A stretch of 64,000 nucleotides of DNA from Callorhinchus milii (taxonomy: Eukaryota): assembly GCF_018977255.1 (NCBI RefSeq), contig NW_024704891.1, forward strand, positions 1 through 64,000, written 5' to 3'. Made by a program: the position numbers and the translations under genes. Every line of letters begins with the position of its first letter. The first letter of the stretch is position 1. Under the pieces are notes generated by a model. That model made no database searches, had not been told where the DNA came from, and worked only from the letters and a program-made list of their open reading frames with translations. This document shows, one piece after another, positions 7,160 through 62,175 of the stretch.

Positions 7160-7267
7160 CCTGCAGATGGCGCACTAAAGATACATATAACATGAGCTGC
7201 AACTCACAGAACATGTCACGTCTCTTTCTGTAACTAACTTGTTTTACAGCGATAACAGGTGCTTCCT
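7160..7267 (+). promoter_or_regulatory. CTCF-like core + E-box/ETS module copy 1
   Basis: CCTGCAGATGGCGC 7160-7173; CAGGTG 7256-7261 followed by CTTCCT. Confidence 0.6.
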
Positions 7268-7937
7268 TTCCCTGTTGTCATTGGTTCCCTCACACAGACT
7301 ATTGCTGCTTCAGCTGAAATGTACAAAGGTTTTACAAAACTGTGATAAGCGCAAGGCTTAGTTTGATGTAGAAGCGTTTCTTTGGTCGCTTTTTCCATCT
7401 TATTGCCTTTCTCTCAATTAAGCAGCCGCCCTTTAGTGGATATCACTGCGCATTAAATGTGACAGATTTTGTTGTGGGCACTCTGGTCATCTGTTTCGGT
7501 TTTATTTCAGAAGGAGACTTAAACGGACCTCATTTAAATAAAAGTTGGAATAGATGATACATCTTTATTGGTCGATTCATGTCTTGGACGCCATTTCAAA
7601 TACTAATGCACAAGAATAAAAAAACCAGTTGCCATTGCTGGAGAGAAGTTTGTTTCGGAGGTGGTAGCGAAGAGTTTAACTGAGAATATACTGCAAGGTG
7701 AATTGCTGGTGGGTGAAATCAAGGCTGTGTTCCCATCCTTTCCGAGACCCATTGGTTCCCAATCGCCGGCAGATCAAGTTCAATATCCTCTGGTGAGTGC
7801 GAAACGCCTACAATTGGAGACAGTGAACCACTGAACCCGTCAGATCAGCCGCTTCCTCACAACTTGTCGCTAAAGCAGCGACACAGCGATATACAAAGGA
7901 AGAGATCCCATTATCTGTCCACACCTCAGCAGCCAAC

Positions 7938-8756
7938 ATGACAGCTCTCTGCCAGTTACTGATAGCAATCCTCACCATAGCCGGTAAGTATGTGTGGAGA
8001 TGCCCAGGGCATAAAATTTACATTATACTTGATCAGAAGTTTAGTGACGAGAGCACTCACCTCACAAGCGAGAGGACCTGTGTTCGATTCCCGGGCAACG
8101 TGAAACATCCAGCAAATTTGCTTACACCTCAAGCCTGTGATTATCGGCAGTAAGTAGGAACGCGGATGATAATTGTTTCAGGGATAGCTTTCCGAGAGTA
8201 ATAATATATTAAAGAATAAATCAATCAATAGTAATTTCGTCAATCAATCCGTGACGGTTTGTGGGACACTGCAGTGCTTAATTAGCTGCAACGTTTCTCC
8301 CTCAAAATATGGAGTCAATTCTCATAATAATGTATTCTGTGTGCGCTTTGAGACGTCCAAACCGTGCGATAACGTGATATAGAAACGAAATTATAATTAT
8401 AATTATTATGATTGCAAATCTCCACTGAACGTTGCTCAGCAACATGTGTATTTTTTTGTTCTTGCAGATGTCTACGGGCAAGATGTAGTATCCCAATATC
8501 CTCCCGAGATAACAGATTTTGAAGGACAAAACTTTACACTGAACTGCAGTTATTCCACATTGCAGACTGCCTTCTGGTACAGGCAATATCCCGATGGAGC
8601 TCCTCAGTACCTGTTCAGGATATATTCCTCTGGAAAGGTAGACAACCCTCCTGACCGTTTCACTACCGAGCTGATCAAGGATAATAAAGTAATTGAGCTG
8701 CACATACTCGGGGCTGTTGTGGGTGACAGCGCTGTGTATTACTGTGCCCTGGACCC
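7938..8756 (+). CDS. TRAV: TCR V segment V2 (MTAL family)
   Basis: Leader 7938-7983 (MTALCQLLIAILTIA); V exon 8468-8756; RSS CACACTG 8757-8763, 23 bp, ACAAAAACT 8787-8795. Confidence 0.92.
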
Positions 8757-9352
8757 CACACTGTTACAGGAAGGCAGGTTCCCCGTACAAAAACTCAGCA
8801 AACAATCAAGAACTTAGGCAAGTTTCCTTGGTCGACATACTCACCAATATTTACCTAGCAGTGAGTAGGAACCCAGCTGTTAACCGGTTCGTGTATCGCA
8901 AATTTTCTTAATAATAATAATAATATTCCCTTCATAAGGAAATAATTAAAATTTATTCAATATACAACTCTTTTGGGGTAACTGCTGTGCATTAATGGCT
9001 GCAGCGTTTCGCAAATAAAGCATAGTGTATATTGCCTATCAGGTATGTTCAGCAACAGACTTTGAGACTTCTCGAACACGTGATAAGGCGTTGGAAATTA
9101 ACCAATTTTAGCGATTTAATTTCCAAGAGTCACCACAAGGCACACTCTGACGTTCCTAAACTTTTGCCTATTCCAAAAATTCAATTGACATATTCTGTTC
9201 ACTCTGTAATCTGAAAATCATTTTGAGATGTCTTCAAAACATATTGAGTCGCTATGTCAAGGGCGAGGATCATAATTTTTATTAATGCTCTCCGTATCTC
9301 AGTAAACAGAATTCGTAATGTTGGAGAGAAAGATCGAGAGTAAGAAAGAGAG

Positions 9353-9533
9353 NNNNNNNNNNNNNNNNNNNNNNNNNNNNNNNNNNNNNNNNNNNNNNNN
9401 NNNNNNNNNNNNNNNNNNNNNNNNNNNNNNNNNNNNNNNNNNNNNNNNNNNNNNNNNNNNNNNNNNNNNNNNNNNNNNNNNNNNNNNNNNNNNNNNNNNN
9501 NNNNNNNNNNNNNNNNNNNNNNNNNNNNNNNNN
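9353..9533. other. Assembly gap (N run)
   Basis: 181 N; the flanks match the paralog at 32460-32590, which holds a (GA)n tract. Confidence 0.98.
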
Positions 9534-10541
9534 TATATGGAAAAATTCCAGGTGTAGCGTGGATGCATGGAAATTAGTTATGAAAAAATATAAAAATTAG
9601 ATTTTTTTAGAAAATATTGTCACTCTAACCACCACAATTTGCGTGACGCTGATGTGTGCAATTCGTTACTGTGTTTCGCCCGATAATACGCTGTCACTAC
9701 GCTTGACAGAGTAACCTGTGTACCGATTTTAGACGTCTCGAAGACGTGATTAGGCGCTATACCAATAAATTGGATCATTATTCTATCTCTCTGTTTCATT
9801 GGGATATTCATAATGATGCTGATGGGTATCCCCATATTTCACATTCCAGCTGAACAAAAATAAATGCTAATATATGAAGTGTCATTCAGCGAAATAAACA
9901 GCAGAGAAAAATAACTTGAAGTAATGAATTATGCCAGAAATAATTGTGTCTTGTACGCAAACTTCTGAAACCCAGATGCATAGAGCAGAAATGGACCGGA
10001 AGGAAACTTTCCACCAATTGGGGCAGAGACATCTGAGAAACTGCTGATATTACGTGATTCCTCCTCTTTCGCTTCGAACCCTCGCAATGGCTCGTTTCAA
10101 CTTAATATCAACTTGACACCTGCCCCCGGGGACTTGATGCCAACACATAGTGTAGCCGTCTGCACACACTCAGGGTCTTCCACTGAGTACCTCGTCCTGC
10201 CTTCTTGTAACTATCGTAACAATACTTGATGCTTTATACAGCGCCTTAAGTCATCTCTGAGGCATATGAAAGCGCTTCACATGATAAACTGTAAAGTGTA
10301 GTGACTGCGTATTGTATGGTCGAAACTATAGAAACAATTGGACAAAACAGAGATAATCAAACAGTCGCGGGTCGAGTCCCAATTATCTTTTGAGGGATAA
10401 TTACCCCTTGAAAGCGATTCGCCAATTGACCATTGGATTCCTACTTCATGTTATGTAAACAGAGGCGTGTGGAGTGAGGAAAGTTGATTAAGCTTTCAAA
10501 GGAAACTTGGATTTGTTCATCAAAGCGCTGAAAGATTCGTT

Positions 10542-12946: not shown

Positions 12947-13605
12947 CACAGTGAGACAGTTACATAGAGAGGCCGTACACAAACCTCCAGTGATCTGCCA
13001 GCAATTCCGCTCTTGTTCATCACAATAACTGCTCAGCACTCATTGCCTCTCAGTTTCCCTCAATTTGCTTGTTAACGAAGGGATGTCTATGTCATGTCTG
13101 CAGGACATGTGGTGTCCTGTAGCTCAATAGTGAGAGCGAAAGGACCTGGTTCGATTCCGGGCTGATTGCTTTTACGGGGTTAATGATTCCTTCAAAATGA
13201 CAAAACATATTAAAAAATTAGTCACACAACCCAATGGGACACTGAAGTTAAGACTCGGCTGCTTTGTTTCGCTCACACAGTATGAAGCCAATTCGTTTAC
13301 CGTGTATTATGTGAAGCACTTTGCGGCGTCTGGAAGATGCAGCAATGTGCAATAGCGAATGAAAAGTTTACAACTATAATTAAATTTAATCATGTTATTG
13401 TCGCAGTAATAACCTCAAAGTCCTGCTCTCTGTGGCTAAGCCGCCATATATACGAGCCTTTCTGTGGTGTTTTAATCAGCAGGATAACATCAAATACAAA
13501 AACTCATATTCAAATACAGCCATACGTAACGGGAAATAAAAAATGGGCAGAAAGATATTTGCCATCAAATGTCTCCAATTATACAGGTGTTGCAGCTGCA
13601 ATTCA

Positions 13606-13710
13606 CCAGCAGAAGGCGAACCCAGCACACATATAACATGAGCTGCAACTTATACAACTTTATCACTTTCCTTTCTCAGCTCGCCTTGCCGGCACTAACA
13701 GGTGCTTCCT
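13606..13710 (+). promoter_or_regulatory. CTCF-like core + E-box/ETS module copy 2
   Basis: CCAGCAGAAGGCGA 13606-13619; CAGGTG 13699-13704 + CTTCCT. Confidence 0.55.
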
Positions 13711-15128
13711 TTTACAGTTGGCATTGGTTCCTTCATACACTATTTCTGCTTCAGCTGAAACATACAAAGGTCTCTCTAAAGCATAAGTAACAAAAGGTTT
13801 AGTTCACTGAAGAAGCAGCTTCTGTGTCACTTTTTCTATATCTGTCTCCCAAATAACCAGTCGCCCTTAATCCGATCTCTCTGCTGTATAGTGCTTCTCT
13901 CCTGAAATGTTGTCGATATGGCTACCACCACACTTTCAGGCAATATATTCATGCAGTATACTGTGGGAAGCGCTTTCAGACGCATCACCGGCATCATATG
14001 TCAAAGGAACAAATGCAAACATATATATTATTATTCCTGGTTCAGGGTCACATTTATGTTGCAGTGTCTTACCACTGGGTGTCTCTCGGGCGCTGAAATT
14101 CTGACAAGACACCACTGGCTTGAAAGCCTGTGAAAAATGGATCAATAAAGCATATTCCTGCACACCGCTTCTAACCGTTTTCAGAAGGTTGCCAACCGCA
14201 TCCCATTGCTTGGTTGACACTTTCCATTCTGAGCAACAGATATACTCGAAACGTAGATTATTGGAATCAAAGTTTATTACAAATTGTATGGGATCAGTCG
14301 ACATAATGTACGGGTGTTTCAGGATTCTCTGACTGTTCTGCTCCCACAATTAATGAAAAATCTATTCCACATATCCGAATCAATCCTAAACCTGGTTTCT
14401 ACAGAATATAGAGATTTTTGGTATCTCTCTTCCTGAAACACAAATTTCTTCATACAGTATTCCTGCAAGTCGACCCATTATTAAGATCTGTGCTCTTTGC
14501 CAAAGCACATCTGGGTCCTATAGGTTGGTGGTTAGAACATTAGCCTCGCATGCAGTGGAGATTCACAGCATTGAGCAATTCTGCGCAAATTTGCTTACTG
14601 CACACGCTTCTGTTTAACCGACCAGTGAATAGGAACCCGGTTATCAGCCGAATGGCGAACAGTTTGCCAGGGGAATAACACCGTAAGAAAGTGGTAAATT
14701 GGTCACGCATTCAAGGATTGTATGCCTGGCACAGCTGTGTGCATCAGGTTGCCGAGGTTCACTCTAAAAGCACAGTCAAATTATTTTACCGTATATTCCA
14801 CAGACAATGCGAGACGTGTCCAAGACCTAATAAGGCACTTAGTATTATTATTATTTGTATAATTTCTTGAGTCTTTGTACTCAGGTCTCTCTGCACTGTC
14901 TCTTTGTTGCGTTACTATTGTTTGCCACAGCGAGGAGAAGTGAATCTGAATGTAAACGTTAGGGGGAGTCGCAATGCACCTCCACCAAAGATCACAGACA
15001 AGATAATGACGCGGGGATAAGAGACAACTCCTTAAATGGAGAAAAGTTTATCAACCAGACGCTACGTTTAGATAAATTCTCGTTACATTTCAACGGAAGA
15101 CATTGACGTGAATCGACGGCAGTTGAGA

Positions 15129-18080: not shown

Positions 18081-18483
18081 CACAGAGGCACAGATCAGCG
18101 ATTCCGCCCTACAAGAACTGCCTGTAGCTAAATGTTTATAGCACTCGCCTCGAAAGCAACCAAGCAAGCAAGATACGGGGGTTCAATTCACGGCAAAGTA
18201 TTTTGTGGCGTTTCGAAGATCTGATTTTGCACTGTATTAAATGCAACGATACTTATTATTATTAAGTACGATCATGTTATTTTCACAGAAATACTTCATA
18301 TATTTTGCTTTCTGCGGAGATCTGCACATGGTAGTCTTCCTCTGCTAATTGAACAAGTCGGAAAAAATAAGAAATATTAATTTTCATTAACGTAGCGACA
18401 TTCGTAACGGGAAAGTTATGACGGGCCGAAAGCAATTTGCTATCAACTGTCTCCAAATATACATGTGCTGTAGCTCCAATCCA

Positions 18484-18591
18484 ACAGCAGTAGTCGCACT
18501 AAAGACACACATAACATGAGCAGCGACTGACATAACTTCTCACGTTCCTTTCTGTAACTAACATCCTTGGCAGCAATAACAGGTGCTTCCT
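18484..18591 (+). promoter_or_regulatory. Module copy 3 (CTCF core decayed, E-box/ETS intact)
   Basis: ACAGCAGTAGTCGC at 18484; CAGGTG 18580-18585 + CTTCCT. Confidence 0.45.
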
Positions 18592-19161
18592 CTTACATTT
18601 GACATAGTTTCCTGATATGCACTGTTGCTACTTCAGCTGAAGTGTAAAAACTTTGAAGCATTATGATCACAAAACTTCGGTTGCTCAGGAAACATTATTT
18701 GCTTCACTTTTTATAGGTGTTGTCTTTGTCCAACACAAGCAGCCATCCTTAAGTGGATCTCACTTCGGTAATAAATATGTTAATTTTCGTTAAGATCTAT
18801 GCAGTCCTTTATATTTGTTTAGCTTGAAAAAGAGATTACAACCGACCTATTTTAATTTAGCTTTAGAATTCAAGAACTATCTCGTATCGCCTGTGAGATG
18901 AAACTGCCGAACTGGGTCCAAAACCAACAACATTCAGACGCATAAAAGCAAGTACCAGTAACAGAGGCAGACCCATTGGCTCCCAATCACCATCAGATCA
19001 AGTTCAAGTTCCTCTGGTTAGTGGGAAACGCCTACAGTTGTAAAAAATAAACCATTCAACACGTCAGATCAGCCGCTGCCTCACAACTTGTCACTGAAGC
19101 AGCAACACAGCGATGTACAAAGGAAGAGATCCCATTATCTGTCCACACCACAGCAGCCAAC

Positions 19162-19747
19162 ATGACAGCTCACTGCCAGTTACTGATAGCAATCCTCACC
19201 ATAGCCAGTAAGTATGTGTGGACATGCACAGTGCACGATGTTTACATCATAAAATTTCCCAATAATATCGGTGTAATTCTGCTGAATTCAACTGTCTGCT
19301 CAATTTCGCTCAAAAATATAACTAATTCGCTTTACACTATATTCCGTGGTTTGTTTTAGACGTCTGAACCGTGTGATAACGTGCAACATAAAATGGATAA
19401 AAGCGAATTTTAAGTAGCTCGGAAAAATGTGTTGTTGGTGCTTTTGCAGAAGTGAGCGGGCAAGATGTTGCATCACAATATCCTCGCGAGAAAACAGAAA
19501 TTGAAGGGCAAGACGTGATACTAAACTGCAATATTTCAAGATTGGACATTGTCTTCTGGTACAGGCAAAACCCCGGCGGAGCTCTTCGATACGAGCTCAG
19601 GATATTTGCCTCTGGAAAGGTAGACAAATCTCCTGATCTACCCGAACGATTCACTGCTGAACTGATCAAGGAAAATAAAGTAATTAAGCTGCAGATACTC
19701 GGGGCTGTTGTGGGTGACAGCGATGTTTATTACTGTGCCCTGGAGCC
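19162..19747 (+). CDS. TRAV: TCR V segment V6 (MTAL family), open frame with defective RSS heptamer
   Basis: Leader 19162-19207; V exon 19450-19747; heptamer TACACTG 19748-19754, 23 bp, ACAAAAACT 19778-19786. Confidence 0.85.
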
Positions 19748-21336: not shown

Positions 21337-22736
21337 CACAGAGGCACAGATCAGCGGTTCCGCCCTACAAAAACTGCCATGTGGGGTCCTGTAGCTCAGT
21401 GGTTACAGCACTTGCCTTACAAGTGATAGACGTTGGTTCAATGACCTGCAGAACGAATCATTGTGCAACTTTCCTTATTCCACACACTAGTCTCTGGTTA
21501 CCAGCAGTAAATAGGAAGCAGGTTGTTAATCGGTTGGAGTATCGATTTTTCAGAGGCAATAATTCCATCTGAATAATAGTGTTAATAATAATTTGGTCAC
21601 TTCATCCAATGAGTCAACGACAATTACAATTTGCTGCCGTGCTTCGCCCTCACACTATGCAGTCAATTCGTTTACTGCATATTGAATGAAGCACTGAGTG
21701 GCGTCTCGAAGATGTGATATGGCGCTGTATCAAACGCAACTATTATTATTGTTGTTATTAACTGTAGTCATGTTATCATTCCAGTAATAATTAAAAATGT
21801 CTTGCATTCTGGGGAGCGCTGCCATGTGCAAAATTCTTACTATGCTGCATTAGTCAGTAAGTAAACATCAAAACAAACTATTTCCGTTTATATTGCTTAA
21901 ACAAAAACTATTTCCGCTATCTGTAGAGAAACTGTTTCTGCTGGTGGTTGGGGGAATGCAGAATACGGCTGCAATAGAGCCAGTCCAGTTAGCAGAGAAG
22001 TTGGTAGGAAAAAAATACGAAAAATTTAAGGAAATCTGGAAAACTTCCACAAAGATTCTGGAGATGTTCGTTCCATTCATATTTTCCAGACTGAGTTGGA
22101 CACATTTATTTTAGCTCAGAATATCAAGGGTTACGAAGAAAAGGTTAGAATATGTGTTGAGAGATAAATCAAACATGATGTGATATAACGTTGGAACAAA
22201 CTCAAGGACCTGATGGTCTGCTCCTATTCCTAGTTAGCGCTTTCCACGTATGGGAGCGTTCTTGGCGAGTCACTAAAGAAACGAAACCATTTAGTGTATT
22301 GAAGTTAAAGAAGAATGAACATTTCATTTCATTTAAAGTCTAGTGAGCACATTTAACTTGCGACGACGTCCTGACGTGAACTGACTTGAATAAATGTCAA
22401 TATGTTGTCACTCTGGTGCAAAATGCTCCAAGTCAGCTAATTGTTCAGTCAAATGATATAATCGATGAAATAATAAGACAAGGAATTCAATAGAAATGGA
22501 GGAGCAAGTGGCGCAGCAAGTGTTAGCACAGAGACACGTCAATGTAAAATAATGTGAATGACACCGAATATCCGAATATTCCACAGAGGAAGATAAAATA
22601 TGGGGAACGAGCAGGGAAATTAGATTAATGCATAAACTTCCTGTGGAGAAGATAGCACCAAGGAAAAGTAAGACGGGCCCAAAATAATTATGCTATGAAA
22701 CCTCTCCAATTGTGTACGTATTGTAGTTGCAATCCA

Positions 22737-22847
22737 CCAGCAGATGGCGCACTAAACAAACACATATAACATGAGCTGCAACTCACATAATACGTCACGC
22801 TCCTTTCTGTAACTACCTTTCCTTTACAGCAGTAACAGGTGCTTCCT
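22737..22847 (+). promoter_or_regulatory. CTCF-like core + E-box/ETS module copy 4
   Basis: CCAGCAGATGGCGC 22737-22750; CAGGTG 22836-22841 + CTTCCTG. Confidence 0.65.
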
Positions 22848-23827
22848 GTTGCAGTTGACATATTTCACTCATACACACTATTGCTGCTTCAACAGAAATT
22901 TACAAATATTTGCCTGAAGTATTAACATAAGGCCTCGGTTGCTCATGAAACAATTTCTATCTCACCTATTTTATATTATTGCCTTTATTCTCGATTAGCA
23001 GCCGTTCTTAAATTGTTTTCTCCGCGGTATAGCAATTATCTGTTGACATTTGTTACAGTATCGGCTTCTGCCACACTTTCAGGCAATGCATTCAAGATCA
23101 GAACCACAGGCAGTGTGAAAAAAAAATCTGCTCCTTACAGTTTGTTCAGACCACTGCATTAAAAGTGAACATTAAGCTATTTAATACGTTTATTACTATG
23201 CAATTTAAAAAGATCATTGATATGTCATCCCGCAACTGAAACATTCGAAAGCGACGAAACTGCTCACTGTGAAATACAGTTTGGATTACGTTCTGCTGTT
23301 CTGGTCTGACACTCTAGAGCAGGCCTGGCTGTCAGTATTGTTGGTGAAGCTTGTCCTACCGAGGAGATATTAAACCCAGGCCCAGGCGGCTTGCATGAAG
23401 GGACTATAGTGATGCCATTGCAATGCTCCAGAAAGTTTTCAACCGGTGTCTGGGCAGACATTCCATCGGTTAAATTCATCTTTCATTCATAGCTGTTCGA
23501 AGGAAAGTGTTGCATACAAATTGTTTGAGGAGGTTTGAGACGTGTCGACTAAATGACAAGGCTGTATTTGATAAAAGCATTTCTGAAACCCGTGTGTTTG
23601 TGTGGGGGGAGTGGAGGGTGCGGAGCGCTCTAATGCAACGGAAGTGATTGGGCGATGCGCCTCAGTGCGGGCGGGGCAGTGACTGTGTGACGCAGCTCTG
23701 TGGGCGTGGCAGTGGCTGTGTGGGCGGGGCTCTGTGTGGGCGGGGCTATGACTGTGTGGCTGCTGAGCCAAAAAGCCCCATCAATCCACATTGGGGATTT
23801 AATGTCAGACACGGGATCAGGATGCTC

Positions 23828-30229: not shown

Positions 30230-30421
30230 CTTCGAATGCCTTGCTTTATAGGCAGGACTGCCCGTGCAATTCTTCATCTGTGTTTTTTAATAAGTAGAAA
30301 AACTTTTTAAAAAATCTAATTGCATTACTTAGCGCCAATTCAAAACGCGATAATTAAGGCGGGACAGGAACAACTTCCTATCAAGTCTCTCCAATTGCAC
30401 ACTTGCTGTGGCCAAAATGCA

Positions 30422-30523
30422 CCAGCAGATGGCACACTAAACACACATATAACATGAGCTACAATTTGTATAACTTGTCATTTTCATTTCTGTCACTAAC
30501 ATTCTTGGCAGCGATAACAGATG
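30422..30523 (+). promoter_or_regulatory. CTCF-like core + E-box module copy 5
   Basis: CCAGCAGATGGCAC 30422-30435; CAGATG 30518-30523. Confidence 0.55.
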
Positions 30524-31090
30524 CTTCATCTCGGGATTGTCGACAATACAGCCCTCACACACTTCTGAGTTTGAATTTAAATACAGACTGTCAGCTTCAA
30601 GTGCAAACTTCTATCCTGAACAAACAACATTTTGGCACATAAGTGAAAATATTAAGAACGGAGGCAGGATATCAACTCAGATTTGATGTTAGAAAGTAAT
30701 TCCTTAATCTTTCCGGTTTGGCTGCACGATTCAACGATTCATCGACCAAATGACTGCATTCACAAAAATTATAATAATCATTTCATTTGATATAGCGCCT
30801 GATAACTTCTCCGAGACGTCTCAAGGAGATTCACAGATTATAATACAAAGTAAATTGCTGAGCGGTGTAACGCGAGTCTATGTTTCCATCGTCGCCCAGA
30901 CCGATTGACTCCCAATCCGCGGCAGATCAACTTCAAGATCCTCTGGTCCGTGGTAAACGCCTACAATTGGAGGTAATAAACCACTGAACACGTCAGATCA
31001 GCCGCTGCCTCACAACTTATCAATGAAGCAGCAACACAGCGATATACAAAGGAAGACATTCCATTATCTGTCCACACCTCAGCAGCCAAC

Positions 31091-32460: not shown

Positions 32461-32506
32461 GAAAGATCGAGAGTGAGAAAGAGAGGGACACAGAAAGACA
32501 CACAGA

Positions 32507-41421: not shown

Positions 41422-41572
41422 CTCCGTCGGTGCTGTTTTGATAAATAGGGAAATATCAAAAACAACAGGTTCCATTTTTAAAGCGCCATTTACAATAAGG
41501 AACGATAAGTTTGACCGTGAACTCCTGGCTGTCAAATGTCCCCAATTGTGCACGTGTTGCCGCTACAATCCA

Positions 41573-41683
41573 CCACCAGATGGCGAAACAAGAACAATTA
41601 TTAACATGAAATGCAACTTACATAACTTGTCAGGTTCGTTTCTGTAACTGACTTTTCAGTGGCATCTGTAACAGGTGCTTCCT
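41573..41683 (+). promoter_or_regulatory. CTCF-like core + E-box/ETS module copy 6
   Basis: CCACCAGATGGCGA 41573-41586; CAGGTG 41672-41677 + CTTCCTG. Confidence 0.6.
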
Positions 41684-42649
41684 GCTACAGTTGTTAAAGT
41701 TCCCTCGCATACACCTTTGCATATTCAACTGTAGATTACAAAGATTTGGCTAAAGCGTGGCTCTATGCTGCTCAACAAAGTCATTTAAATTTCATAATTT
41801 ACATTTTATTGTCTTTCTCCTAAATAGGCAGCCGCCCTTAAGTGGATCTCACTGCGATAGTCAAGGTGCTTGATTTTGTAACTGTAATCTGGTCATACGT
41901 TTTGGTTTAAATTGGGAAGGATTAAATCTGAACTTGATTATTTTAATTCAGGCTTTTCGGTTTGCAGCTTCCTTACTTGGATGCAATGCTAAGAAAAAAT
42001 GGACAATGATAATGATGATAATAATAATAATGATGATAATAACAATAGTTGCAGTGGTAATAATAGTATTAATAGTAATAATAATTCTTGCCTTTTTATA
42101 CAGAGCCTTGCAAGTTGCAGGAGGCAGCAAAGCTTAATATGCGCTTATGTAAAAAGAAGTGACGCACTAATTCCCCCGATAAATAAATAAAGTGATTTGA
42201 GGCTTTTATCCATGTGTTGTTGAAAAGACAGCCTTTACAGTATCCTCAATTTGAATTTCATTCCAGACTGAGAGCTCAAAATACCGACTTGGATCCTGAA
42301 GCAACAACATTTTGATACATAACAGAAAGTGCCGCCAACAGAGACAAGTTGTCATTTCAGCCTTCATGGTATTAAGTAAATACTTATTCGTTTAGGCCAG
42401 GCCGCATGTTTCCTTGATCCGTCAACGAAATCCTTGCATTCATCATGTCCAGGCTAGATTACGCCAAATGTCCGCTCATTGTATAATCTGCAACACAGTT
42501 CACAAGTTACAAACAATGCAGAAATCTGTATAGAGTGTTTTTCCCTCACATGTTTCCAACTGTCGGTGTTCCCAAGCAATATCTGCTGGCGCCGAAACGA
42601 CGGAAGCTGGAGTTCAAAAACCACAGCAATATTAAATTTGCACTGGATT

Positions 42650-46150: not shown

Positions 46151-46884
46151 TTTGAGCGGGTCTCTGAGTGTGCGGGACAGTGACTGGGTGACCTGGCTGT
46201 ATGGCAGGGTCAGCAATTGTGCGAGCTAATCTCTGTGTGGGGGGGCAGTGGATGGATGTTAGGGACAAAGTGTCGGTGGGGCAGTGACTGTGTGGGAGGG
46301 GCAGTGACTGTGTGGGCGATGCTCTGCGTGGGCGGGGCAATGGCTGGTGGGCGGAGTTATCTGTGGGCGCGGCAGTTACCGTGTGGGCGGGGCAGTGAGA
46401 GAGAGCAACTCGGTTCGATTCCGACAGTAAATTTATGAAACCTGTTGTTAGTCGATTGGCGGATCGCATTTCCAGCGGTAATAATTCAAGATAATAATAT
46501 TAATAATAAATTGGTCTTTTAATCCAATGGTCACGGTTATTTCGCCCACAAAGCATCTGGTGAATTCGTTTACCGTACATTATTTGAAGCGCTTTGAGGC
46601 GTCTCGTAGTTGCGATTTGGCACTGTATCAAATTCATGGATTATTAATATTCATATTATTAATAAAGATGAACATGTTATTGTCAAACAATTAGTTTTGA
46701 ATGCTTTGCTTTCTATATTAGCTGACCATACACTTCTTCCTCTGATTTTTTTAATAAGTAGAAAAACATTTTAAAAAATCTAATTGCATTACTTAGCGCC
46801 ATTCAAAACGCGATAATTAAGGCGGGACGGGAATAACTTGCTCTCAGTTGTCTCCAATTGCACACTTGCAGTAGTCACAATCCA

Positions 46885-46990
46885 CCAACAGATGGCGAAC
46901 CAAACACACATAACGTGAGCAACAATTAAACACGATTGTCACTTTCATTTCAGTAAATAACATCAATGGTAGCGATAACAGGTGCTTCCT
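46885..46990 (+). promoter_or_regulatory. CTCF-like core + E-box/ETS module copy 7
   Basis: CCAACAGATGGCGA 46885-46898; CAGGTG 46979-46984 + CTTCCTG. Confidence 0.55.
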
Positions 46991-48022
46991 GTTACAAATT
47001 GACATTGTTCCCCTCATACACACTATTGTACAAGGGTTTGTCTAAACTGTGATTAACACAAGGCTTAGTTCGATCAATAAGCAATTTCTATGTCACTTTG
47101 TTGCCTTTCTCTCAAATGAGTGGATCTCACTGCAGCAACTTGTTAGATTTGGTTAAGGGCCACATGGTCATTTGTTATGGTTTACTTTGGAAAGGAGATT
47201 AAAATGGACCGCATCTAAATTAAATTGGGGACCGATGGATCATGTTATATAGTCGATTCCTGCCTTGAGCACCATTTGAAACATGACTGTACAAAAATAA
47301 TAAAAATAATAATATTTGCAATTGATATAGCTCCGTTTATTTTGGAGGTGGTAGCGAAGAGTTTAGTGCGCTCATGTGACAAGTTATTGTAGGCAATAAC
47401 AATAGACAATAGGCGCACATTGATATCCCCACATATATTAGGTGACTGATAGCTTTCATCTCGGGGTTATTGACAAAACAGCCCTCACAAACTTCTAAAT
47501 TTGAATTTAGGCATAGACTATCAGCTCAAAGTGCAAACGTGTGTCCTGAACCAACAACATTTTGACATATTAGAGAAAATATCACAAACAGAGGCAGGAT
47601 GTCACATCAGCATTGATGTTGGAAAGTAAATCTTTATTCTTTGAGATTAGGCTGCCTGATTCCACGATTCATCAACCAAATAAATGCATTCACAAAAATA
47701 AAAATAATGCTTTCATTTGTTGTAGCGCCTGATCACTTCTTTCAGACGTCTCAAAGAGCTTCACAGAATATACTGTAAATTAGTAAATTGCTGAGGGGGG
47801 AGAGCGAGACTGTGTTCTCCTCCTAGCCCTGTCCCACTGGCTCCTAATCCACGGCAGAACAACTTGAAGATCCTCTGGTTAGTGGGAAAAGCCTACAATT
47901 GGAGGTAATAAACCACTGAACACGTCAGAACAGCCGCTGCCTCACAACTTGTCACTGAATCAGCAACACAGCGATATACAAAGGAAGAGATCACATTATC
48001 TGTCCACACCTCAGCAGCCAAC

Positions 48023-48838: not shown

Positions 48839-50310
48839 CACACTGTTACAGGAAGGCAGATTCCCCGTACAAAAACTCAGCAGGCAGTCATATCTTGCTC
48901 TCACACATTTCACTTGGTGCCTTCAACAGACTGACAAACTTATGCAATGATAACAGGGAGGTTGGTGTAGCTCAGTGGTTATAGCTCACGCCTCACAAGC
49001 GACTGATGCTGTTTCAATTGCCAGCAGAACAAAACGTTGTGCAAATTTCCTTATTCCACACACCCGTCTCTGTTTGCAAGCAGTAAGTAGCAAGCAGGTT
49101 GTTAATCGATTGGCGGTTCGATTTTCCAGAGGTAATAATGCATTCGGAATAAAAGTGTTGAGAATAAATTGGACACAATGGGACAGCGATGCGTTCAATT
49201 TGTTACCGTGCTTTACACTCACAACGTACAGTCATTCCGTTTACTGTATATTGAAAGAAGCACTGTGCGGTGTCTCGAATATATGATATCGCACTATATA
49301 AAACGCAACTATTATTATTATCATTGTAATTAACTGTAGTCATGTTACCATCCAAGCAGTAAATCAATAAAAATCTATTGCTTTCTGGGGAGCGCTGCCA
49401 CATGCAAGTTCGTTTCCATGCTGCTTTAGTAAGTAAGAAAATATCAAAACATACAAGTTCCATTTATGTTGTTTACACAAAAAATATTAAATCTATTTAT
49501 AGAGAAACTGTTTCCTCTGGTGGATGGTGGAATGCATAACAATGGTGCATTAGAGCCAGTCCTGTTAGCAGTGAAATGGGAAGATCCAAATTACGAAACA
49601 TTTGAATAAATCAGGAAAACTTCCACAAAGAATCTGAGGATGTTTTTTCCATTTGTATTTTCCAGACTGAGTTGGATGCATTTATTTTATCTCAGAATTT
49701 GAAAGGGTACGGAGAAAAGGCAGGAATGTAAGTTGAGGGATAGATCAGCCATGATGTAATCTAACGTTGGAACAGGCTCAAGGAGCTGATATCCTCCTCG
49801 TATTCCTATTCAACACTTTCCACGTAGGGGAGCGACTTGGCGAGTCACTAAAGAAGGAAAACATTTTTGTGTATTTACGATATAGAAGAATGAACATTAA
49901 TTTAAGTTTTAGGTCTGGAGAACACATTTACCTTGGGACGTCCTCCAGACATGAAACAGCATTACCTAATTGCCAGTCTTCTGTTATTCTGTTGTAAAAT
50001 GCTCAAAGTCAGCTAAGTGTTTAGTCAAATAATATAATCGATGAAGTAAAACGGCACGGAATTGAATTAAAATTGGAGAGCAAGTGGGGCAGCGAGTATT
50101 TGCACTGAGACACGTCAAGTTAAGAGAATGTGAATGACATTTTACTCGAGTGTTCCAGGCAAGAACAGAAAATATAAGGAAAGATCGTGGAAATGAGACT
50201 AATGTATAAAATTTCAGTGTTCAAGACGCCACCAAGGAAAGGCAAGACGGGCCCAAAATAATTATGCTATGAAACCTCTCCAATCGAATACGTGCTCTAG
50301 CGACAATCCA

Positions 50311-50422
50311 CTAGCAGATGTCATACTAAACGAACACATATAACAAATGAACTGCAACTCACATAAGTTGTCAAGTTCCTTTCTGTAAGTAACTTCCTTT
50401 GCAAAGGTAACAGCTGCTTCCT
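50311..50422 (+). promoter_or_regulatory. Module copy 8 (CTCF core decayed, E-box/ETS intact)
   Basis: CTAGCAGATGTCAT at 50311; CAGCTG 50411-50416 + CTTCCTG. Confidence 0.45.
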
Positions 50423-51583
50423 GTTGCATTTCACATAGTTAACTCATACACACTATTGCTGCTTCAACTGACATTTACAAATATTTACCTAAAGTATTAA
50501 TACAAGATTTAGGTTGCTCAAGTAACAATTTCTATCGCACATATTCTATATTGTTCCATTTTTCCCCAAATAGCAGCCGCTGCTAAATTGTATTCCCTAC
50601 TATATAGCAATTCTCTCTTGAAAGTTGTTAGATTATCGGCTTCTGCCACCCTTTCAGGCAATGCGTGCAAGATCAATATAACTCGCCGTGCGAAAAAAAA
50701 GTACTTATCCCCTCCTCACCTTATGTTCAGGCAACTACACTGAACGTGAATATTAAGCTATTTAATAAGTTTATTACCATATAATTAAAAAAGATCATTG
50801 ACATTTCATCCCGCAACTGAAACATTCAAAAGCAACCGAAGTGCTCACTGTGTAAAATATATTGGATTAATTTCTGATGTTCTGTGTTGACACACCAGAG
50901 CTGGCCTGGCTGTCGGGTTAGCTTTTCCTACCAAGGAGATATTAAACCCAGGTCCAGGCGGCTTGCATGAAGGGAGTGTAATGATACCATTGCACTACTT
51001 GAGAAAGAACAAGGTTTCTATCTATAGACTTTCCATTGGTAAAATGCATCTTTCATTCGTAGCTATTTGTGGGACAGTGTTGTATACAAATTGGAGGCTA
51101 AACTGACAAATTCGGTACTTGATATTATAACTTGCGAGGAACTTTGAGGCGAACCGACGAAATGACAAGACTGCATTTGATCTAACAATTTCTCAAGCAC
51201 AATTAATGAACACAATTGTAAGGGCATGTCTTATTCAACATTGTAATAATAACGCTAATAAATGTAAATGTTGCATTTGATATACTGCCATATTACGTCA
51301 TTGAGACGTCTCAAACGTGTGGGCGGGGCGCTGTAAAACAACGGCAGAGATTGGGCGATGCGGCTCAGTGCGGGCGGGGCAGGACTGAGAGACGTTGCTC
51401 TGTGGGCTTGACATTGGCTGTGTGGGCGGGGCAGTGACTGAGTGACGTAGCTTTGTGGGCGTGGCAGTGGCTGTGTGGGCGGGGCTCTGTGTGTGGGCGG
51501 GGCTGTGACTGTATGGCTACTGAGCCCCAAAGCCCCATCAGTCCACATTGGGGAGATAATGTCAGACACGGGATCAGGTGCTC

Positions 51584-56709: not shown

Positions 56710-57121
56710 CACAGAGGCACAGATCAGCGATTCCGCCCTACAAAAACTGCCACGTGGAGTCCTGTAGCTCAGTAGTTATAGCACTCGTCTCACAAGCATC
56801 AAGCAAGCGGGATACGTGTGTTCGATTCACGGGAAAGCGCTTTGAGGCGTTTCGACGATGTGGTTTGGCACTATAATAAATGCAACGATTATTATTATTA
56901 AATATGATCATGTTATTTTCACAGAAATAGCTTCATACATTTTGCACTCTGGGGAGACCTGCACTGGAAGTGTCCTTCTCTGCTATTTCAACAAGAAGGA
57001 AACAATAAGAAACATTAACTTGCATCTACGTAGCGACATTCATAGGGGGAATGTTAAGACGGGCCGAAAATAATTTGCAATCAACTGTCTCCAAATGTAC
57101 ACATGCTGTAGCTGCATTCCA

Positions 57122-57210
57122 CCAGCAGATGTAACACGAAAAATAATATAACATGAGCTGCGACTGACATACCTTGTCACGTTCCTTTATGTAACTGACA
57201 GGTGCTTCCT
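57122..57210 (+). promoter_or_regulatory. Module copy 9 (CTCF core partly decayed, E-box/ETS intact)
   Basis: CCAGCAGATGTAAC at 57122; CAGGTG 57199-57204 + CTTCCTG. Confidence 0.45.
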
Positions 57211-58229
57211 GTTGCAGTTGACATAGTTTCCTGACATACATGTTGCTGCTTCAGCTGACGTGTAAAAACCTTGTGTAAAACATGATTGGCACAAAATTTA
57301 GATTACTCAAAGAACAGTGTTTGTGTCACATTTTAGATGTGTTGTCTTTCTCTACCAGAAGCATTCTCCCTCATGTGGATCTCACTGAGATAAAAAATGT
57401 GATAAATCTTGTTATGAGTAATATGGTCATTTATGTTTGTTTAATTTGAAAACGAGATTACAACTGACCTCGTTTAACTTAAATTAAGAATTGAAACGCA
57501 ATCTCTGATACACTGGGAGCTCAAACTGTCGATCTGGGTCCAGAACCAATAACATTCAGACACATAGGAGAAAGTACCAATAACAGATGCCGGTTTTCAA
57601 CTCAGCCTTGATAGAAAGTAAACCTTTTTTAAAGCTAGGCTGCATTGTTCAAGATCAACCAAATGAATGCATTCAGAACAGTATTGAAAATAAAAATGCT
57701 CATTTGATATACATCCATACTGCCTCTCGAAGGCGTCCTGAAGCGCTTCACAAATGCACAGTAAAGCAAATTGTTATTGGGTGAAACGCACTCCTCGCAA
57801 CCTCGCCCAGACCCACTGGCCTCCAATCCGCGGCAGATCAAGTTCAAGATCCTCATTAGAGAAAGTAACATGAAAAGCGGAAAAGTTGTTACCTCAGCCT
57901 TGATGACAGAAACTGAACCTTATTCCTTTCGGCTCTGCTGCATGGCTCAACGATTCACTTCAAATCGGTTCACTCATTAAACAATAAAATGAATTGTTGT
58001 TGTGTGATACGTGCGGCAATATTCCCATACCAACCCAGACCCATTCGCTTCAAATCGAGAGAAGATCGAGTTCAAGATCCTCTGGTTAGTGGGAAACGCC
58101 TACAATTGGAGACAGTAAACCACTGAACCCGTCAGATCAGCCGCTTCCTCACAACTTGTCACTGAAGCAGCAACACAGCGATATACAAAGGAAGAGATCC
58201 CATTATCTGTCCACACCTCAGCAGCCAAC

Positions 58230-59747: not shown

Positions 59748-60596
59748 ATGACAATGTATGTCTATGTGGTAGCAGTGATCATTACCTTGTCAGGTAAGCG
59801 ACAAACTCGCTCTATTAGTCTGCTTCATGTGCATATTATCCAATGAATATATATTTTTGCATTACATAACCAATACGGTACACGACTCATGCATTCCTGC
59901 AGCAAACGTGTTGACTTGGGTTTAGTTCCCGGCTTGGACATAGCGAAACCTCAGGCAAGTTTCCTTCCTCCACACACGCACCACTTTTTACATCGAGATA
60001 TGTAGGTACCCGTTCGATTGTCGATCGTCGGATCAGGTTTAGGTGTTAATAATCGCTTAACGGGAACCAGTGATAATAATTCTATCAGTCATTCCATGAC
60101 TTTTTATTAGGAAAATGCTGTGCGCAATTTGTTGCCACGTGTCGCCCACACAATACACATTCTCAGAATATTCTATTAAGCATTTGGAGACGCATTGATG
60201 TAGTATGGCGCTGTATGAAAAGCAATAATTTGTACTGGGATTATTGTTATGGTATTGAACGCTGATATGGGTCTGGTTCCCAGGACATTGTGGAGGAGAC
60301 GCTGTAACACAGCTCCAATCTACTGTGACAGTGACTGAAGGGGAGGATGTTTACCTGCAGTGCAATTATACAGCTACAAGCGAATACAATACCTATCTGT
60401 TCTGGTACCGTCACTTTCCCAACAAACCTCCAGAATATATCCTTAGCACAGACACCAACAACAGGATCAAGAACGGCGCGGACTTTGCAGAAGAACGTTT
60501 CTCAACGAATGTGTCTAAAGCGGAGAGAACCGTCCCATTAAATATATTGCAAGTGAGAGTTACAGACTCCGCGGGGTATTACTGTGCACTGAGCCC
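59748..60596 (+). CDS. TRAV: TCR V segment V20 (GHCGG family)
   Basis: Leader 59748-59793; V exon 60284-60596; RSS CACAGAG 60597-60603, 23 bp, ACAAAAACT 60627-60635. Confidence 0.92.
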
Positions 60597-60905
60597 CACA
60601 GAGGCACAGATCAGCGGTTCCGCCCTACAAAAACTGCCATGTGGGGTCCTGTGGCTCAGTGGTTACAGCACTTGCCTCACAAGCGATAGACGTTGGTTCA
60701 ATGACCTGCAGAACGAATCATTGCGCAACTTTCCTTATTCCACACACTAGTCTCTGGTTACCAGCAGTAAATAGGAAGCAGGTTGTTAATCGGTTGGAGT
60801 ATCGATTTTTCAGAGGCAATAATTCCTTCTGAATAATAGTGTTAATAATAAATTGGTCACTTCATCCAATGAGTCACCGATAATTACAATTTGCTGCCGT
60901 GCTTC

Positions 60906-60983
60906 GCCCACACAGCCACTGCCACGCTACGTCACTCAATCACTGCCCACACAGCCACTGCCACGCTACGTCACTCAATCACT
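60906..60983 (-). repeat. 2 x 39-bp insertion
   Basis: GCCCACACAGCCACTGCCACGCTACGTCACTCAATCACT twice; absent at the paralogous site 21641-21660. Confidence 0.9.
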
Positions 60984-62065
60984 GCCCTCACAATATGCAG
61001 TCAATTCGTTTACTGTATATTGAATGAAGCACTGAGTGGCGTCTCGAAGATGCGATATGGCGCTATATCAAATGCAACTATTATTATTAATGTTATTAAC
61101 TATAGTCATGTTATCATCAAAGTGGTAACTAAAAATGTCTTGCTTTCTGGGGAGCGCTGCCACATGTACGATTCTTTCTATGCTGCATTAGTAAGTAAGT
61201 AAACATCAAAACAAACAATTTCCGTTTAAATTGCTTAAACAAAAACTATCTGTAGAGAAACTGTTTCTTCTGGTGGTTGGGGGAATGCAGAATAAGGGTG
61301 CATTAGAGCCAGTCCAGTTAGCAGAGAAATTGGGGGAAAAAAATTAGGAAAAATTTAAGGAAATCTGGAAAACTTCCACAAATATTCTGGAAATCTTGGT
61401 TCCATTCACATTTTCCAGACTGAGTTGGATACATTTATTTTAGCTCAGAATATCAAGGGTTACGAAGAAAAGGTTAGAATATGTGTTGAGAGATAAATCA
61501 GCCATAATGTAATATAACGTTGGAACAAACTCAAGGACCTGATGGTCTGCTCCTATTCCTATTTAGCGCTTTCCACGTATGGGAGCGTTCTTGGCGAGTC
61601 ACTGAAGAAACGAAACAATTTAGTGTATTGAAGTTAAAGAAGAATGTACATTAAATTTCATTTAAAGACTAGTGAGCACATTTGCATTGCGACGTCCTCC
61701 TGACGTGAACCGACTTGAATAAATATCAATATGTTATCACTCTGGTGCAAAATGCTCCAAGTCAGCTAATTGTTCAGTCAAATGATATAATCGATGAAAT
61801 AATAAGACAAGGAAATGAATAGAAATGGAGGAGCAAGTGGCGCAGCAAGTGTTAGCAGAGAGACACGTCAATGTAAAAGAATGTGAATGACACCGAATAT
61901 CCGAATGTTCCAGAGAGGAAGATAAAATATGGGGAACGAGCAGGGAAATTAGACTAATGCATAAACTTCCTATGGAGAAGATAGCACCAAGGAAAGGCAA
62001 AACGGGCCCAAAATAATTATGCTTTGAAACCTCTCCAATTGTGTACGTGTTGTAGCTGCAATCCA

Positions 62066-62175
62066 CCAGCAGATGGCGCACTAAACAAACACAAATAACA
62101 TGAGCTGCAACTCACATAACACGTCACGCTCCTTTCTGTAACTACCTTCCTTTGCAGCAGTAACAGGTGCTTCCT
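62066..62175 (+). promoter_or_regulatory. CTCF-like core + E-box/ETS module copy 10
   Basis: CCAGCAGATGGCGC 62066-62079; CAGGTG 62164-62169 + CTTCCTG. Confidence 0.65.

What the first reader, a model, noticed from the sequence alone, without database searches (positions are those of the whole stretch)
7160..62079. Ten co-oriented CTCF-like sites spaced through the V array (candidate loop-extrusion architecture in a basal jawed-vertebrate TCR locus)
Seen: a roughly 350-bp intergenic module recurs 10 times, always on +, with cores at 7160, 13606, 18484, 22737, 30422, 41573, 46885, 50311, 57122 and 62066. Seven are close to the CTCF consensus CCASYAGRKGGCRS (e.g. CCAGCAGATGGCGC at 22737 and 62066; CCACCAGATGGCGA at 41573); three (18484, 50311, 57122) are decayed. 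Several have TGYAG/TGCCG 15 nt upstream of the core, about where the CTCF upstream motif sits. A copy lies 3' of all seven GHCGG-family Vs, about one per two V genes. Established: mammalian Tcra/d and Igh V regions carry arrays of same-orientation CTCF sites that shape cohesin looping and V usage. Inference: a similar array may exist here, spread by duplication of V cassettes. Caveat: co-duplication alone explains the uniform orientation.
Basis: partly seen in the sequence, partly recalled or inferred. Interest (0 to 1): 0.8.

Follow-up and report, generated by a model that had tools for sequence, protein, structure and literature searches.

The report
Repeated regulatory-looking block between TCR V genes
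A roughly 400-base non-coding block with a strong match to the CTCF binding motif recurs ten times, always in one direction, between elephant-shark T-cell-receptor V genes. The only part that clearly evolves slowly is a neighbouring E-box/ETS site, so a CTCF looping role remains an untested candidate.

Summary
Eight cores score at least 12 bits on a CTCF matrix (five at least 16), against about 2-3 such hits expected in the whole window. The module is not a dispersed repeat: its depth in genome contigs (66-680) is like that of the V exons (160-840), while the neighbouring SINE reaches 36,000-255,000.

The 14-bp core took 18 substitutions on the copy tree against 22.4 expected. Once the embedded CAGATG E-box is set aside, the CTCF-specific positions are indistinguishable from neutral. 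Co-orientation follows from cassette duplication.

The only block that passes a window-wide test for slow evolution is an E-box/ETS composite about 95 bp downstream of the core. No transcripts cover the module in four RNA runs.

Best reading: a co-duplicated, PAIR/V8E-like candidate regulatory block whose CTCF site is plausible but unproven. The scan has already noted this same module on at least eight other pieces of this genome (Callorhinchus milii). Two of the three follow-ups found no selection on the CTCF site, as I did; the third called it a credible but untested regulatory element.

The parts
7065..7489 (+). Module copy 1, between V-A (RSS 6208-6246) and V-B 8446
   Evidence: nhmmer E 1.5e-117. 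CTCF-like core 7160-7173 scores 16.1 bits. E-box/ETS block at 7254-7268. A weak reverse CTCF-like match lies at 7424 (11.3 bits).
13509..13930 (+). Module copy 2, after V-C 12652; next V-A is 3.8 kb on
   Evidence: nhmmer E 6.5e-103. Core 13606-13619 scores 14.6 bits, with its inner E-box broken (CAGAAG). E-box/ETS block at 13697-13711.
18387..18806 (+). Module copy 3, 269 bp after the V-A RSS and about 350 bp before the V-B leader
   Evidence: nhmmer E 6.7e-116. Core 18484-18497 has decayed to 4.2 bits. E-box/ETS block at 18578-18592 is kept. RNA depth is 0.
22638..23055 (+). Module copy 4, between V-A 21065 and V-D 24362
   Evidence: nhmmer E 5.5e-120. Core 22737-22750 scores 19.9 bits and matches the IUPAC consensus exactly. 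E-box/ETS block at 22834-22848. RNA depth is 0-1.2.
30326..30724 (+). Module copy 5, between V-A 29224 and V-B 31557; its 3' half has been replaced
   Evidence: nhmmer E 1.4e-84. Core 30422-30435 scores 17.1 bits. At 30516-30530 the E-box is kept as CAGATG and the ETS half is broken.
41475..41895 (+). Module copy 6, after the V-A pseudogene at 39430
   Evidence: nhmmer E 5e-104. Core 41573-41586 scores 18.4 bits. E-box/ETS block at 41670-41684.
46790..47170 (+). Module copy 7, 2.0 kb after the V-F RSS and before V-B 48606; no V-A present
   Evidence: nhmmer E 2.5e-93. Core 46885-46898 scores 13.6 bits. E-box/ETS block at 46977-46991.
47455..47654 (+). Weak partial match to the 3' half of the module
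   Evidence: nhmmer E 8.6e-6, model positions 203-420. Not analysed further.
50213..50634 (+). Module copy 8, after V-B 48606 where the V-A has been deleted; before V-D 52120
   Evidence: nhmmer E 2.3e-108. Core 50311-50324 has decayed to 2.6 bits, but its CAGATG is intact. At 50409-50423 the E-box changed to CAGCTG and the ETS half is kept. The deletion junction lies at about 48966.
57025..57429 (+). Module copy 9, 278 bp after the V-A RSS and before V-B 58775
   Evidence: nhmmer E 3.4e-104. Core 57122-57135 scores 12.1 bits, with the GGCGC half lost and CAGATG kept. E-box/ETS block at 57197-57211. DNA depth is 139-195 and RNA depth is 0.
61968..62383 (+). Module copy 10, after V-A 60325; a recent duplicate of copy 4
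   Evidence: nhmmer E 4.9e-124. Core 62066-62079 scores 19.9 bits. E-box/ETS block at 62162-62176. K to copy 4 is 0.03-0.04. DNA depth is 640-680 and RNA depth is 0-3.

Best explanation
The module is a piece of ancestral intergenic DNA that was copied along with V-gene cassettes during the tandem expansion of the elephant-shark TCR alpha/delta-type V array. That history fixes its position (after V-A, before V-B or V-D) and its single orientation.

Most of its ~400 bp drifts at 0.75-1.0 times the local neutral rate. One short block, an E-box abutting an inverted ETS site (AACAGGTGCTTCC) about 95 bp downstream of the CTCF-like core, is kept by selection.

The most likely function (inferred) is a lymphoid, E-protein/ETS-driven enhancer-like element. 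It would open chromatin around neighbouring V segments, as PAIR and V8E elements do in the mouse Igh locus.

The CTCF-consensus core was present in the ancestral module. It is still strong in five to eight copies and points toward the presumed J-C side, so CTCF may well bind those copies and stall cohesin there (about 45% in my estimate). Nothing in the sequence shows that this site, as opposed to the CAGATG E-box inside it, has been maintained by selection.

Shown: the copies, their orientation, motif strength, low copy number and block-wise constraint.

Inferred: factor binding, enhancer activity and looping.
For: - Copies and orientation: ten full copies, all on the + strand.
- Motif strength: cores score 12-19.9 bits in 8 of 10 copies, against 1.9-2.9 hits of that strength expected in the window.
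- Copy number like the V cassette, not like a transposable element: module depth is 66-680, V exons 160-840, the SINE 36,000-255,000.
- The module tree and the SINE that abuts the V-A RSS give the same cassette groupings.
- E-box/ETS 14-mer: 4 steps. The probability that any window of shuffled columns is that low is 0.001, or 0.006 for the central part only.
- The E-box is kept in 10 of 10 copies through three variants, CAGGTG, CAGCTG and CAGATG.
- The block occurs nowhere else in the window.
- Whole-module rate: p = 0.229 against 0.288 for the co-duplicated SINE head. K is 0.27-0.35 against 0.30-0.38 for the 600 nt upstream of V-B.
- Analogy: PAIR binds Pax5, E2A, CTCF and YY1, and V8E is a conserved ~200-bp block just after the VH8 RSS. 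Both enhance V recombination (PMC10390877).
Against: - The module diverges faster than V-A synonymous sites (K 0.28 against dS 0.20), so overall constraint is weak or absent.
- Only one short block passes a family-wise test. The second block is borderline (P 0.04-0.2) and the CCAAT-like block is not significant.
- Ten related copies give little power.
- No RNA covers the module in four RNA runs, although V exons are covered and a spliced V-B leader intron is seen. The tissues and stages of those runs are unknown.
- Transcription-factor assignments rest on motif resemblance only.
Confidence: 0.5

Rival explanations
1. The ten sites are working CTCF-binding elements that stall cohesin, form loops with oppositely oriented sites near J-C, and so shape V usage. 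It would be a loop-extrusion architecture like that of mammalian Igh, Tcrb and Tcra/d V regions.
For: - The motif is strong: p is 1e-7 to 1.4e-5 in 8 of 10 copies.
- A site of at least 16 bits arising by chance in one 420-bp module has p about 1e-3.
- Orientation is toward the presumed J-C side, as in mouse (PMC5859386).
- Eight copies keep at least 12 bits, against 3.3 expected when the whole 19-mer drifts at the module's own rate (P 0.012; 0.003 with CpG hypermutability).
- High-information positions took 0.75 steps per column against 1.55 for low-information positions.
- Loop-extrusion signatures with convergent CTCF motifs are reported in skate and lamprey (bioRxiv 10.64898/2026.10.19.759930).
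Against: - The core is not slower than the module (18 against 22.4 steps, P 0.21), and GGCGC is at or above average.
- The retention signal falls to P 0.09-0.13 if the neutral rate is scaled to V-exon dS.
- It falls to P 0.07-0.5 once the inner CAGATG E-box is set aside.
- The contrast between high-information and other positions is not significant (fraction 0.13).
- In copies 8 and 9 the CTCF-specific half is lost while CAGATG is kept.
- Uniform orientation carries no information beyond duplication.
- No convergent partner sites or binding data are available.
Confidence: 0.22
2. The module is a neutral relic. It is simply the part of the ancestral spacer that has escaped transposon insertion and deletion. 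The CTCF-like and E-box/ETS strings are chance features of that ancestor and do nothing.
For: - Whole-module divergence is about equal to other alignable non-coding DNA and exceeds V-exon dS.
- The flanks are unalignable because of SINE and LINE turnover, not because of point substitutions.
- The CTCF core is at the average rate.
- There are no transcripts.
Against: - The E-box/ETS block has 4 steps in 14 columns, with family-wise P 0.001-0.006, and 10 of 10 copies retain a CANNTG E-box through changes of the inner bases.
- The module survives in all ten cassettes even though insertions and deletions have replaced nearly everything else between the V-A RSS and the next V promoter.
- The module is somewhat slower than the co-duplicated SINE head (0.229 against 0.288).
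Confidence: 0.2
3. The module is a transposable-element fragment that carries a CTCF site, in the way rodent B2 SINEs spread CTCF sites, and it landed repeatedly in the array.
For: - The array is full of SINEs. A tRNA-like SINE head abuts every V-A RSS, and its (ATT)n-tailed end lies about 100-150 bp upstream of the module in several copies.
Against: - Depth on the module is 66-680, the same as or below the V exons and about 100-1,000 times below the SINE.
- All ten copies have one orientation and a fixed place in the cassette.
- The module lies beyond the SINE's (ATT)n tail.
- No sharp termini were seen, and there is no Rfam match in the module.
Confidence: 0.05

Closest known systems
Mouse Igh PAIR elements and the VH8-associated V8E element (Ebert 2011; Hill et al. 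2023, PMC10390877)
   Same: Both are repeated intergenic non-coding blocks scattered through a V array and tied to one V family. Eleven of the 14 PAIRs sit with a VH8 gene, and V8E is a conserved ~200-bp block just after the VH8 RSS. Both carry an E-protein-type site together with a CTCF site in one fixed orientation.
   Different: - Different locus (TCR alpha/delta-type, not Igh) and lineage (chimaera).
- No sequence homology was tested.
- No Pax5 site was assessed, and an ETS site is the conserved partner here.
- PAIR4 and PAIR6 give abundant lncRNA in pro-B cells, whereas no RNA was seen on the module here (tissues unknown).
- Enhancer activity and factor binding are shown for PAIR4/V8.7E and are only inferred here.
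CTCF-binding element arrays of mammalian antigen-receptor V regions (Igh, Tcrb, Tcra/d; Loguercio et al. 2018, PMC5859386)
   Same: There are many consensus CTCF motifs spread through the V region, with nearly all pointing toward the (D)J-C end. Some lie close to the RSS of particular V families. Spacing here is 3.4-11.2 kb.
   Different: The mammalian sites are defined by ChIP-seq occupancy with cohesin, and here there is only a motif. All ten sites descend from one ancestral site by duplication, and the CTCF-specific positions show no detectable constraint. The J-C side and its convergent sites lie outside the window.
SINE-borne CTCF sites (rodent B2 expansions)
   Same: A CTCF motif is multiplied by copying of the DNA that carries it.
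   Different: Copying here is by segmental cassette duplication, not retrotransposition. Copy number is that of the V cassette, with a single orientation and a fixed position.

Membership tests
CTCF-binding element array of an antigen-receptor V region | Sequence match to the CTCF core motif at a genome-wide meaningful level | tested here: met
   Eight of ten cores score at least 12 bits (p <= 1.4e-5) and five at least 16 bits (p <= 1.5e-6). Three match the IUPAC consensus exactly.
CTCF-binding element array of an antigen-receptor V region | In vivo occupancy by CTCF and cohesin in rearranging lymphocytes | not testable with these tools
CTCF-binding element array of an antigen-receptor V region | Motifs oriented toward the (D)J-C end, with convergent partner sites there | tested here: inconclusive
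   All ten lie on the strand of the V genes and RSSs, so they point downstream. J-C and any partner sites are outside the window. The only reverse hits of at least 12 bits lie at 2145, 33980 (the 3' end of a V-C exon), 34908 and 49508. What underlies the other three was not checked.
CTCF-binding element array of an antigen-receptor V region | Motif maintained by selection (slower than its flanks) | tested here: not met
   The core took 18 steps against 22.4 expected (P 0.21), and GGCGC took 10 against 7.9. The non-E-box positions have P 0.07-0.5. The whole-19-mer retention test is suggestive only (P 0.003-0.13).
PAIR/V8E-type regulatory repeat of a V array | Repeated intergenic element interspersed among V genes and associated with particular V families | tested here: met
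   There are ten copies. One follows every one of the 7 V-A genes and one precedes every one of the 5 V-B and 2 V-D genes.
PAIR/V8E-type regulatory repeat of a V array | Sites for lymphoid transcription factors (E2A, Pax5, YY1) together with CTCF | tested here: inconclusive
   E-boxes (CAGGTG, CAGATG, CAGCTG), an ETS core and the CTCF-like motif are present, and the E-box/ETS block is constrained. Pax5 and YY1 were not assessed, and no binding data exist.
PAIR/V8E-type regulatory repeat of a V array | Non-coding transcription and active chromatin in precursor lymphocytes | tested here: inconclusive
   Depth on four module copies in RNA runs X9, X11, X15 and X25 is zero or near zero, while V exons are covered. 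The tissue and stage of those runs are unknown, and only 2 of 14 mouse PAIRs are strongly transcribed (PMC10390877).
PAIR/V8E-type regulatory repeat of a V array | Sequence homology to the mouse elements | not tested
   No mouse PAIR or V8E sequence was available through the tools. Independent origin is the default expectation.
Dispersed transposable element carrying a CTCF site | High genomic copy number, both orientations, positions unrelated to genes | tested here: not met
   Module depth is 66-680, against 36,000-255,000 for the adjacent SINE and 160-840 for V exons. All ten copies are on the + strand at a fixed cassette position.

The most novel reading that the evidence does not exclude
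A chimaera TCR alpha/delta V array carries its own PAIR-like regulatory repeat. A CTCF site facing J-C is coupled to an E-protein/ETS enhancer core and copied with every V cassette. V-array-embedded architectural and enhancer modules that steer V(D)J recombination by loop extrusion would then have existed, or arisen convergently, at the base of jawed vertebrates and in a T-cell-receptor locus.
Probability: 0.2. Interest if true: 0.7.

Novelty: new member of a known kind. Interest (0 to 1): 0.38.

Why it matters
If the module is active, it gives a compact and naturally replicated system for asking how old the CTCF/cohesin and local-enhancer control of V-gene choice is. The copies form a natural allelic series: CTCF site strong with E-box/ETS intact, CTCF site lost with E-box/ETS intact (18484, 50311), and ETS half lost (30422). 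That series could be read out against use of the neighbouring V genes in thymus repertoires.

No paper on CTCF sites in cartilaginous-fish antigen-receptor loci turned up in the library.

If the module is inactive, it shows how cassette duplication alone can produce an impressive-looking array of co-oriented consensus CTCF motifs.

Tried and rejected
1. More copies or other species. The V-A protein search returned only 23 Callorhinchus milii UniRef entries. The look-up of P0001 for its genomic place found nothing on record. So I could neither pool copies from the rest of the genome nor test other holocephalans or sharks. The DNA collections on offer are microbial, viral or metagenomic.
2. Transposable-element reading: rejected on depth, orientation and position.
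3. RNA gene reading. Rfam at gathering thresholds finds only four tRNA-like SINE heads and nothing in any module. RNA contigs do not cover the modules. No ORF is shared by the copies.
4. CTCF 'upstream motif' (TGYAG 15 nt before the core). It is present in most copies but evolves at the average rate (15 against 15.9 steps). From memory, the spacing is also shorter than the canonical one. It gives no support.
5. CpG retention in the core (7 of 10) is no better than at other ancestral CpGs of the module (4-8 of 10).
6. V-exon dS as the neutral yardstick gave 0.20, below every non-coding yardstick (0.30-0.38). I therefore report results under both scalings rather than choosing one.
7. PDB searches of V-A and V-B place them in the V-set, with TCR alpha, delta and beta and antibody V domains intermixed. 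The alpha/delta assignment rests on the 23-bp RSS, the array layout and the neighbouring NAR-TCR cassette noted by the scan, not on these hits.

Full report
**What is there.** The window is a one-directional array of 20 V segments of six families. All lie on the + strand, and 16 carry a recognisable heptamer / 23-bp spacer / nonamer signal at the 3' end.
- The closest relatives of the family-A V are 23 proteins, all from Callorhinchus milii.
- PDB matches are V-set domains of TCR alpha, delta and beta chains and of antibodies.
- The scan's notes place a NAR-TCR cassette 12 kb beyond the window.
- I therefore treat this as the elephant-shark TCR alpha/delta-type V array. That is an inference.

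**The observation.**
- A profile built from the aligned copies finds ten full copies of about 400 bp, all on the + strand and none on the - strand, plus one weak partial hit at 47455-47654.
- The IUPAC consensus with up to one mismatch gives 7 hits against 0.58 expected.
- The exact score distribution gives p = 1.2e-7 for 19.9 bits and 1.4e-5 for 12.1 bits.
- Hits of at least 12 bits number 13 in the window against 1.9-2.9 expected, and eight of them are the cores.
- A module follows each of the seven family-A V genes, 269-1,334 bp after the RSS for the six intact ones and about 1.76 kb for the pseudogene.
- The other three follow a V-C, a V-F, and a V-B in a cassette from which the V-A has been deleted.
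- Every V-B (5 of 5) and every V-D (2 of 2) has a module upstream of it, so 'downstream of V-A' and 'upstream of V-B or V-D' describe the same place.

**The assembly gap.** The N run at 9353-9533 lies in spacer DNA between a V-B and a V-C. Its left and right flanks align collinearly with one paralogous cassette at 31967-32485 and 32577-33686, which are 91 nt apart there. Order and orientation across the gap therefore look continuous, and no module or exon is expected inside it. I did not look up or fill any letters. Only the distance between copies 1 and 2 is uncertain.

**Is it a dispersed repeat?** I laid the contigs of three genome-scale runs on 12 kb holding four modules.
- The modules have summed word depth of 139-195, 640-680, 66-227 and 425-500.
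- V exons have 160-840.
- Unique-looking spacer has about 240-280.
- The tRNA-like SINE next to them has 36,000-255,000.
- Single contigs run at depth about 18-30. The module therefore exists in the order of 3-35 copies at 80-88% likeness, like the V cassettes themselves.

The module also lies beyond the (ATT)n tail of the SINE that starts right after each V-A nonamer, and Rfam sees only the tRNA-like heads.

**How fast does the module evolve?** Between old cassette pairs the module differs by K of about 0.27-0.35. Three yardsticks are available:
- Synonymous sites of the adjacent V-A exons give 0.20.
- The 600 nt upstream of the V-B exons give 0.30-0.38.
- The SINE head that abuts every V-A RSS, and so was duplicated with the cassettes, gives pooled p = 0.288 against 0.229 for the central 230 columns of the module.

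The module as a whole therefore runs at roughly 0.75-1.0 of the non-coding rate. It stands out as an island of alignable DNA mainly because SINE and LINE insertions and deletions have replaced the rest of the spacer, not because it changes slowly.

**Where is the constraint?** On a maximum-likelihood tree of the ten copies I counted parsimony steps per column: 632 steps over 397 columns.
- The 14-bp CTCF-like core took 18 steps against 22.4 expected (P 0.21), and 107 of 384 windows of that size are as low or lower.
- Its G-rich half GGCGC took 10 against 7.9.
- The block AACAGGTGCTTCC(T), about 95 bp downstream, took 4 steps in 14 columns.
- The probability that any window of shuffled columns is that low is 0.001, or 0.006 using only the central columns.
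- This block is a CAGGTG E-box abutting an ETS core (GGAAGC on the other strand).
- The E-box survives in 10 of 10 copies through three variants (CAGGTG eight times, CAGCTG once, CAGATG once), and the 15-mer occurs nowhere else in the window.
- A second block, ATAACATGAGCTGCAAC, is borderline (P 0.04-0.2).
- A CCAAT-like block and the TGYAG 'upstream motif' are not significant.

**A closer look at the CTCF core.** Raw counts ignore which positions changed, so I simulated neutral drift of the consensus 19-mer down the tree.
- At the module's own rate, 3.3 copies are expected to keep at least 12 bits and 8 do (P 0.012).
- With CpG hypermutability P is 0.003.
- With the rate scaled down to V-exon dS, P is 0.09-0.13.
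- High-information positions took 0.75 steps per column against 1.55 for the others, but 13% of other windows do as well.
- The slow positions are the hexamer CAGATG inside the core (3 steps in 6 columns). This is itself an E-box and is intact in 8 of 10 copies, including the two copies whose CTCF-specific half has decayed (50311, 57122).
- Holding those six columns as observed and letting only the other 13 drift, the CTCF-specific part is not distinguishable from neutral (P 0.51, 0.21 and 0.07 at rate scales 0.7, 1.0 and 1.3).
- The core CpG is retained no better than other ancestral CpGs.

What hint of constraint there is can be credited to an E-box as easily as to CTCF.

**Transcription.** In four RNA runs of this species the V exons are covered and one contig shows the V-B leader intron spliced out (19208-19449, GT..AG). 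The four modules have depth 0, with single stray contigs of depth up to 3. The tissues are coded and unknown, so this is weak evidence against a PAIR-like lncRNA and none against enhancer or CTCF function.

**Comparison with what is known.**
- Mouse V regions carry more than 100 bound CTCF sites. In Tcra/d, 129 of 144 point toward J-C, and in some VH families they lie within 100 bp of the RSS (PMC5859386).
- The 14 PAIR repeats of mouse Igh bind Pax5, E2A, CTCF and YY1. Eleven sit with a VH8 gene, which has its own conserved ~200-bp element (V8E) just after the RSS. PAIR4 and V8.7E together act as enhancers of V recombination, and the orientation of the PAIR4 CTCF site matters (PMC10390877).
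- Signatures of CTCF-anchored loop extrusion are reported for the little skate and the lamprey (bioRxiv 10.64898/2026.10.19.759930). A consensus motif is therefore likely to mean the same thing in a chimaera, which is an inference.
- The module resembles PAIR/V8E in layout and motif content. Membership in either family cannot be claimed, because binding, chromatin state, transcription and homology are untested or inconclusive.
- I found no paper on CTCF sites in cartilaginous-fish antigen-receptor loci.

**Earlier notes of this scan.** The same module has been reported on at least eight other pieces of this genome.
- Three follow-ups reached similar conclusions: the ETS/E-box core is under selection, the CTCF site is not demonstrably so, and the element resembles PAIR.
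- I took the PAIR comparison from those notes and checked it against the paper.
- The rate tests, depth test, RNA test and the E-box-within-CTCF dissection reported here were done independently on this window's ten copies.

**Verdict.**
- The best reading (confidence 0.5) is a co-duplicated, enhancer-like E-box/ETS module that also carries a CTCF-consensus site.
- Working CTCF loop anchors (0.22) and a neutral relic (0.20) remain open.
- A transposable-element origin is unlikely (0.05).
- It is a new member of a known kind if active, and of moderate interest because it is directly testable in thymus chromatin.

Noticed in passing
window 6247-6330, 18120-18200, 21376-21460, 29550-29630, 39715-39790, 56749-56830, 60636-60720: A tRNA-like SINE head begins within a few bases of the RSS nonamer of every family-A V gene. 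It was therefore inserted before the cassettes multiplied and has been copied with them. It is a high-copy family (depth 36,000-255,000), and I used it as an internal neutral yardstick.
   Followed up: partly
window 19748-19754: The V-B at 19452 has TACACTG where its four paralogues have the heptamer CACACTG. The first heptamer base is normally invariant, so this segment may not rearrange, although family members are transcribed and spliced.
   Followed up: no
window 48828-48968: This is a deletion scar. The cassette jumps from the end of V-B straight to the sequence that elsewhere follows V-A, so about 1.5 kb, including a whole V-A gene and its upstream region, is missing. The module downstream (50213-50634) was kept.
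   Followed up: partly
window 39430-39747: A family-A V pseudogene. The reading frame departs from the family after FSTNV and the last third of the V domain is lost. Its RSS, SINE and module are still in place.
   Followed up: no
window 34750-38190 and 3490-4870: A LINE with a 780-aa reverse-transcriptase ORF (35789-38131) is inserted between a V-C and the V-A pseudogene. An older broken copy lies near the window start. Both end in the same 46-bp C/T-rich repeat (4707-4809, 38096-38188).
   Followed up: no
window 10934, 12918, 33980 (- strand): The 3' ends of the three family-C V exons carry a CTCF-like match on the opposite strand (8.6, 9.4 and 12.8 bits). The coding sequence happens to read like a weak reverse site. 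It is the only recurrent reverse-oriented candidate in the window.
   Followed up: no
window 19208-19449: An RNA contig of run X25 joins 19207 to 19450 (GT..AG, 242 nt skipped). This fixes the leader intron of a V-B family member and puts module copy 3 only about 350-400 bp upstream of that leader exon.
   Followed up: partly
window 2607-3407: A 26-bp minisatellite of about 31 copies at 79% match, next to the old LINE fragment.
   Followed up: no
window 17750-18078 versus 56375-56707 and 21065-21334: The V-A exon tree disagrees with the SINE and module trees. The V-A at 17750 is closest to those at 21065 and 60325 (K 0.13-0.15), but its SINE and module are closest to those of the 56375 cassette. 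This suggests gene conversion or unequal crossing-over between the V exon and the spacer.
   Followed up: partly
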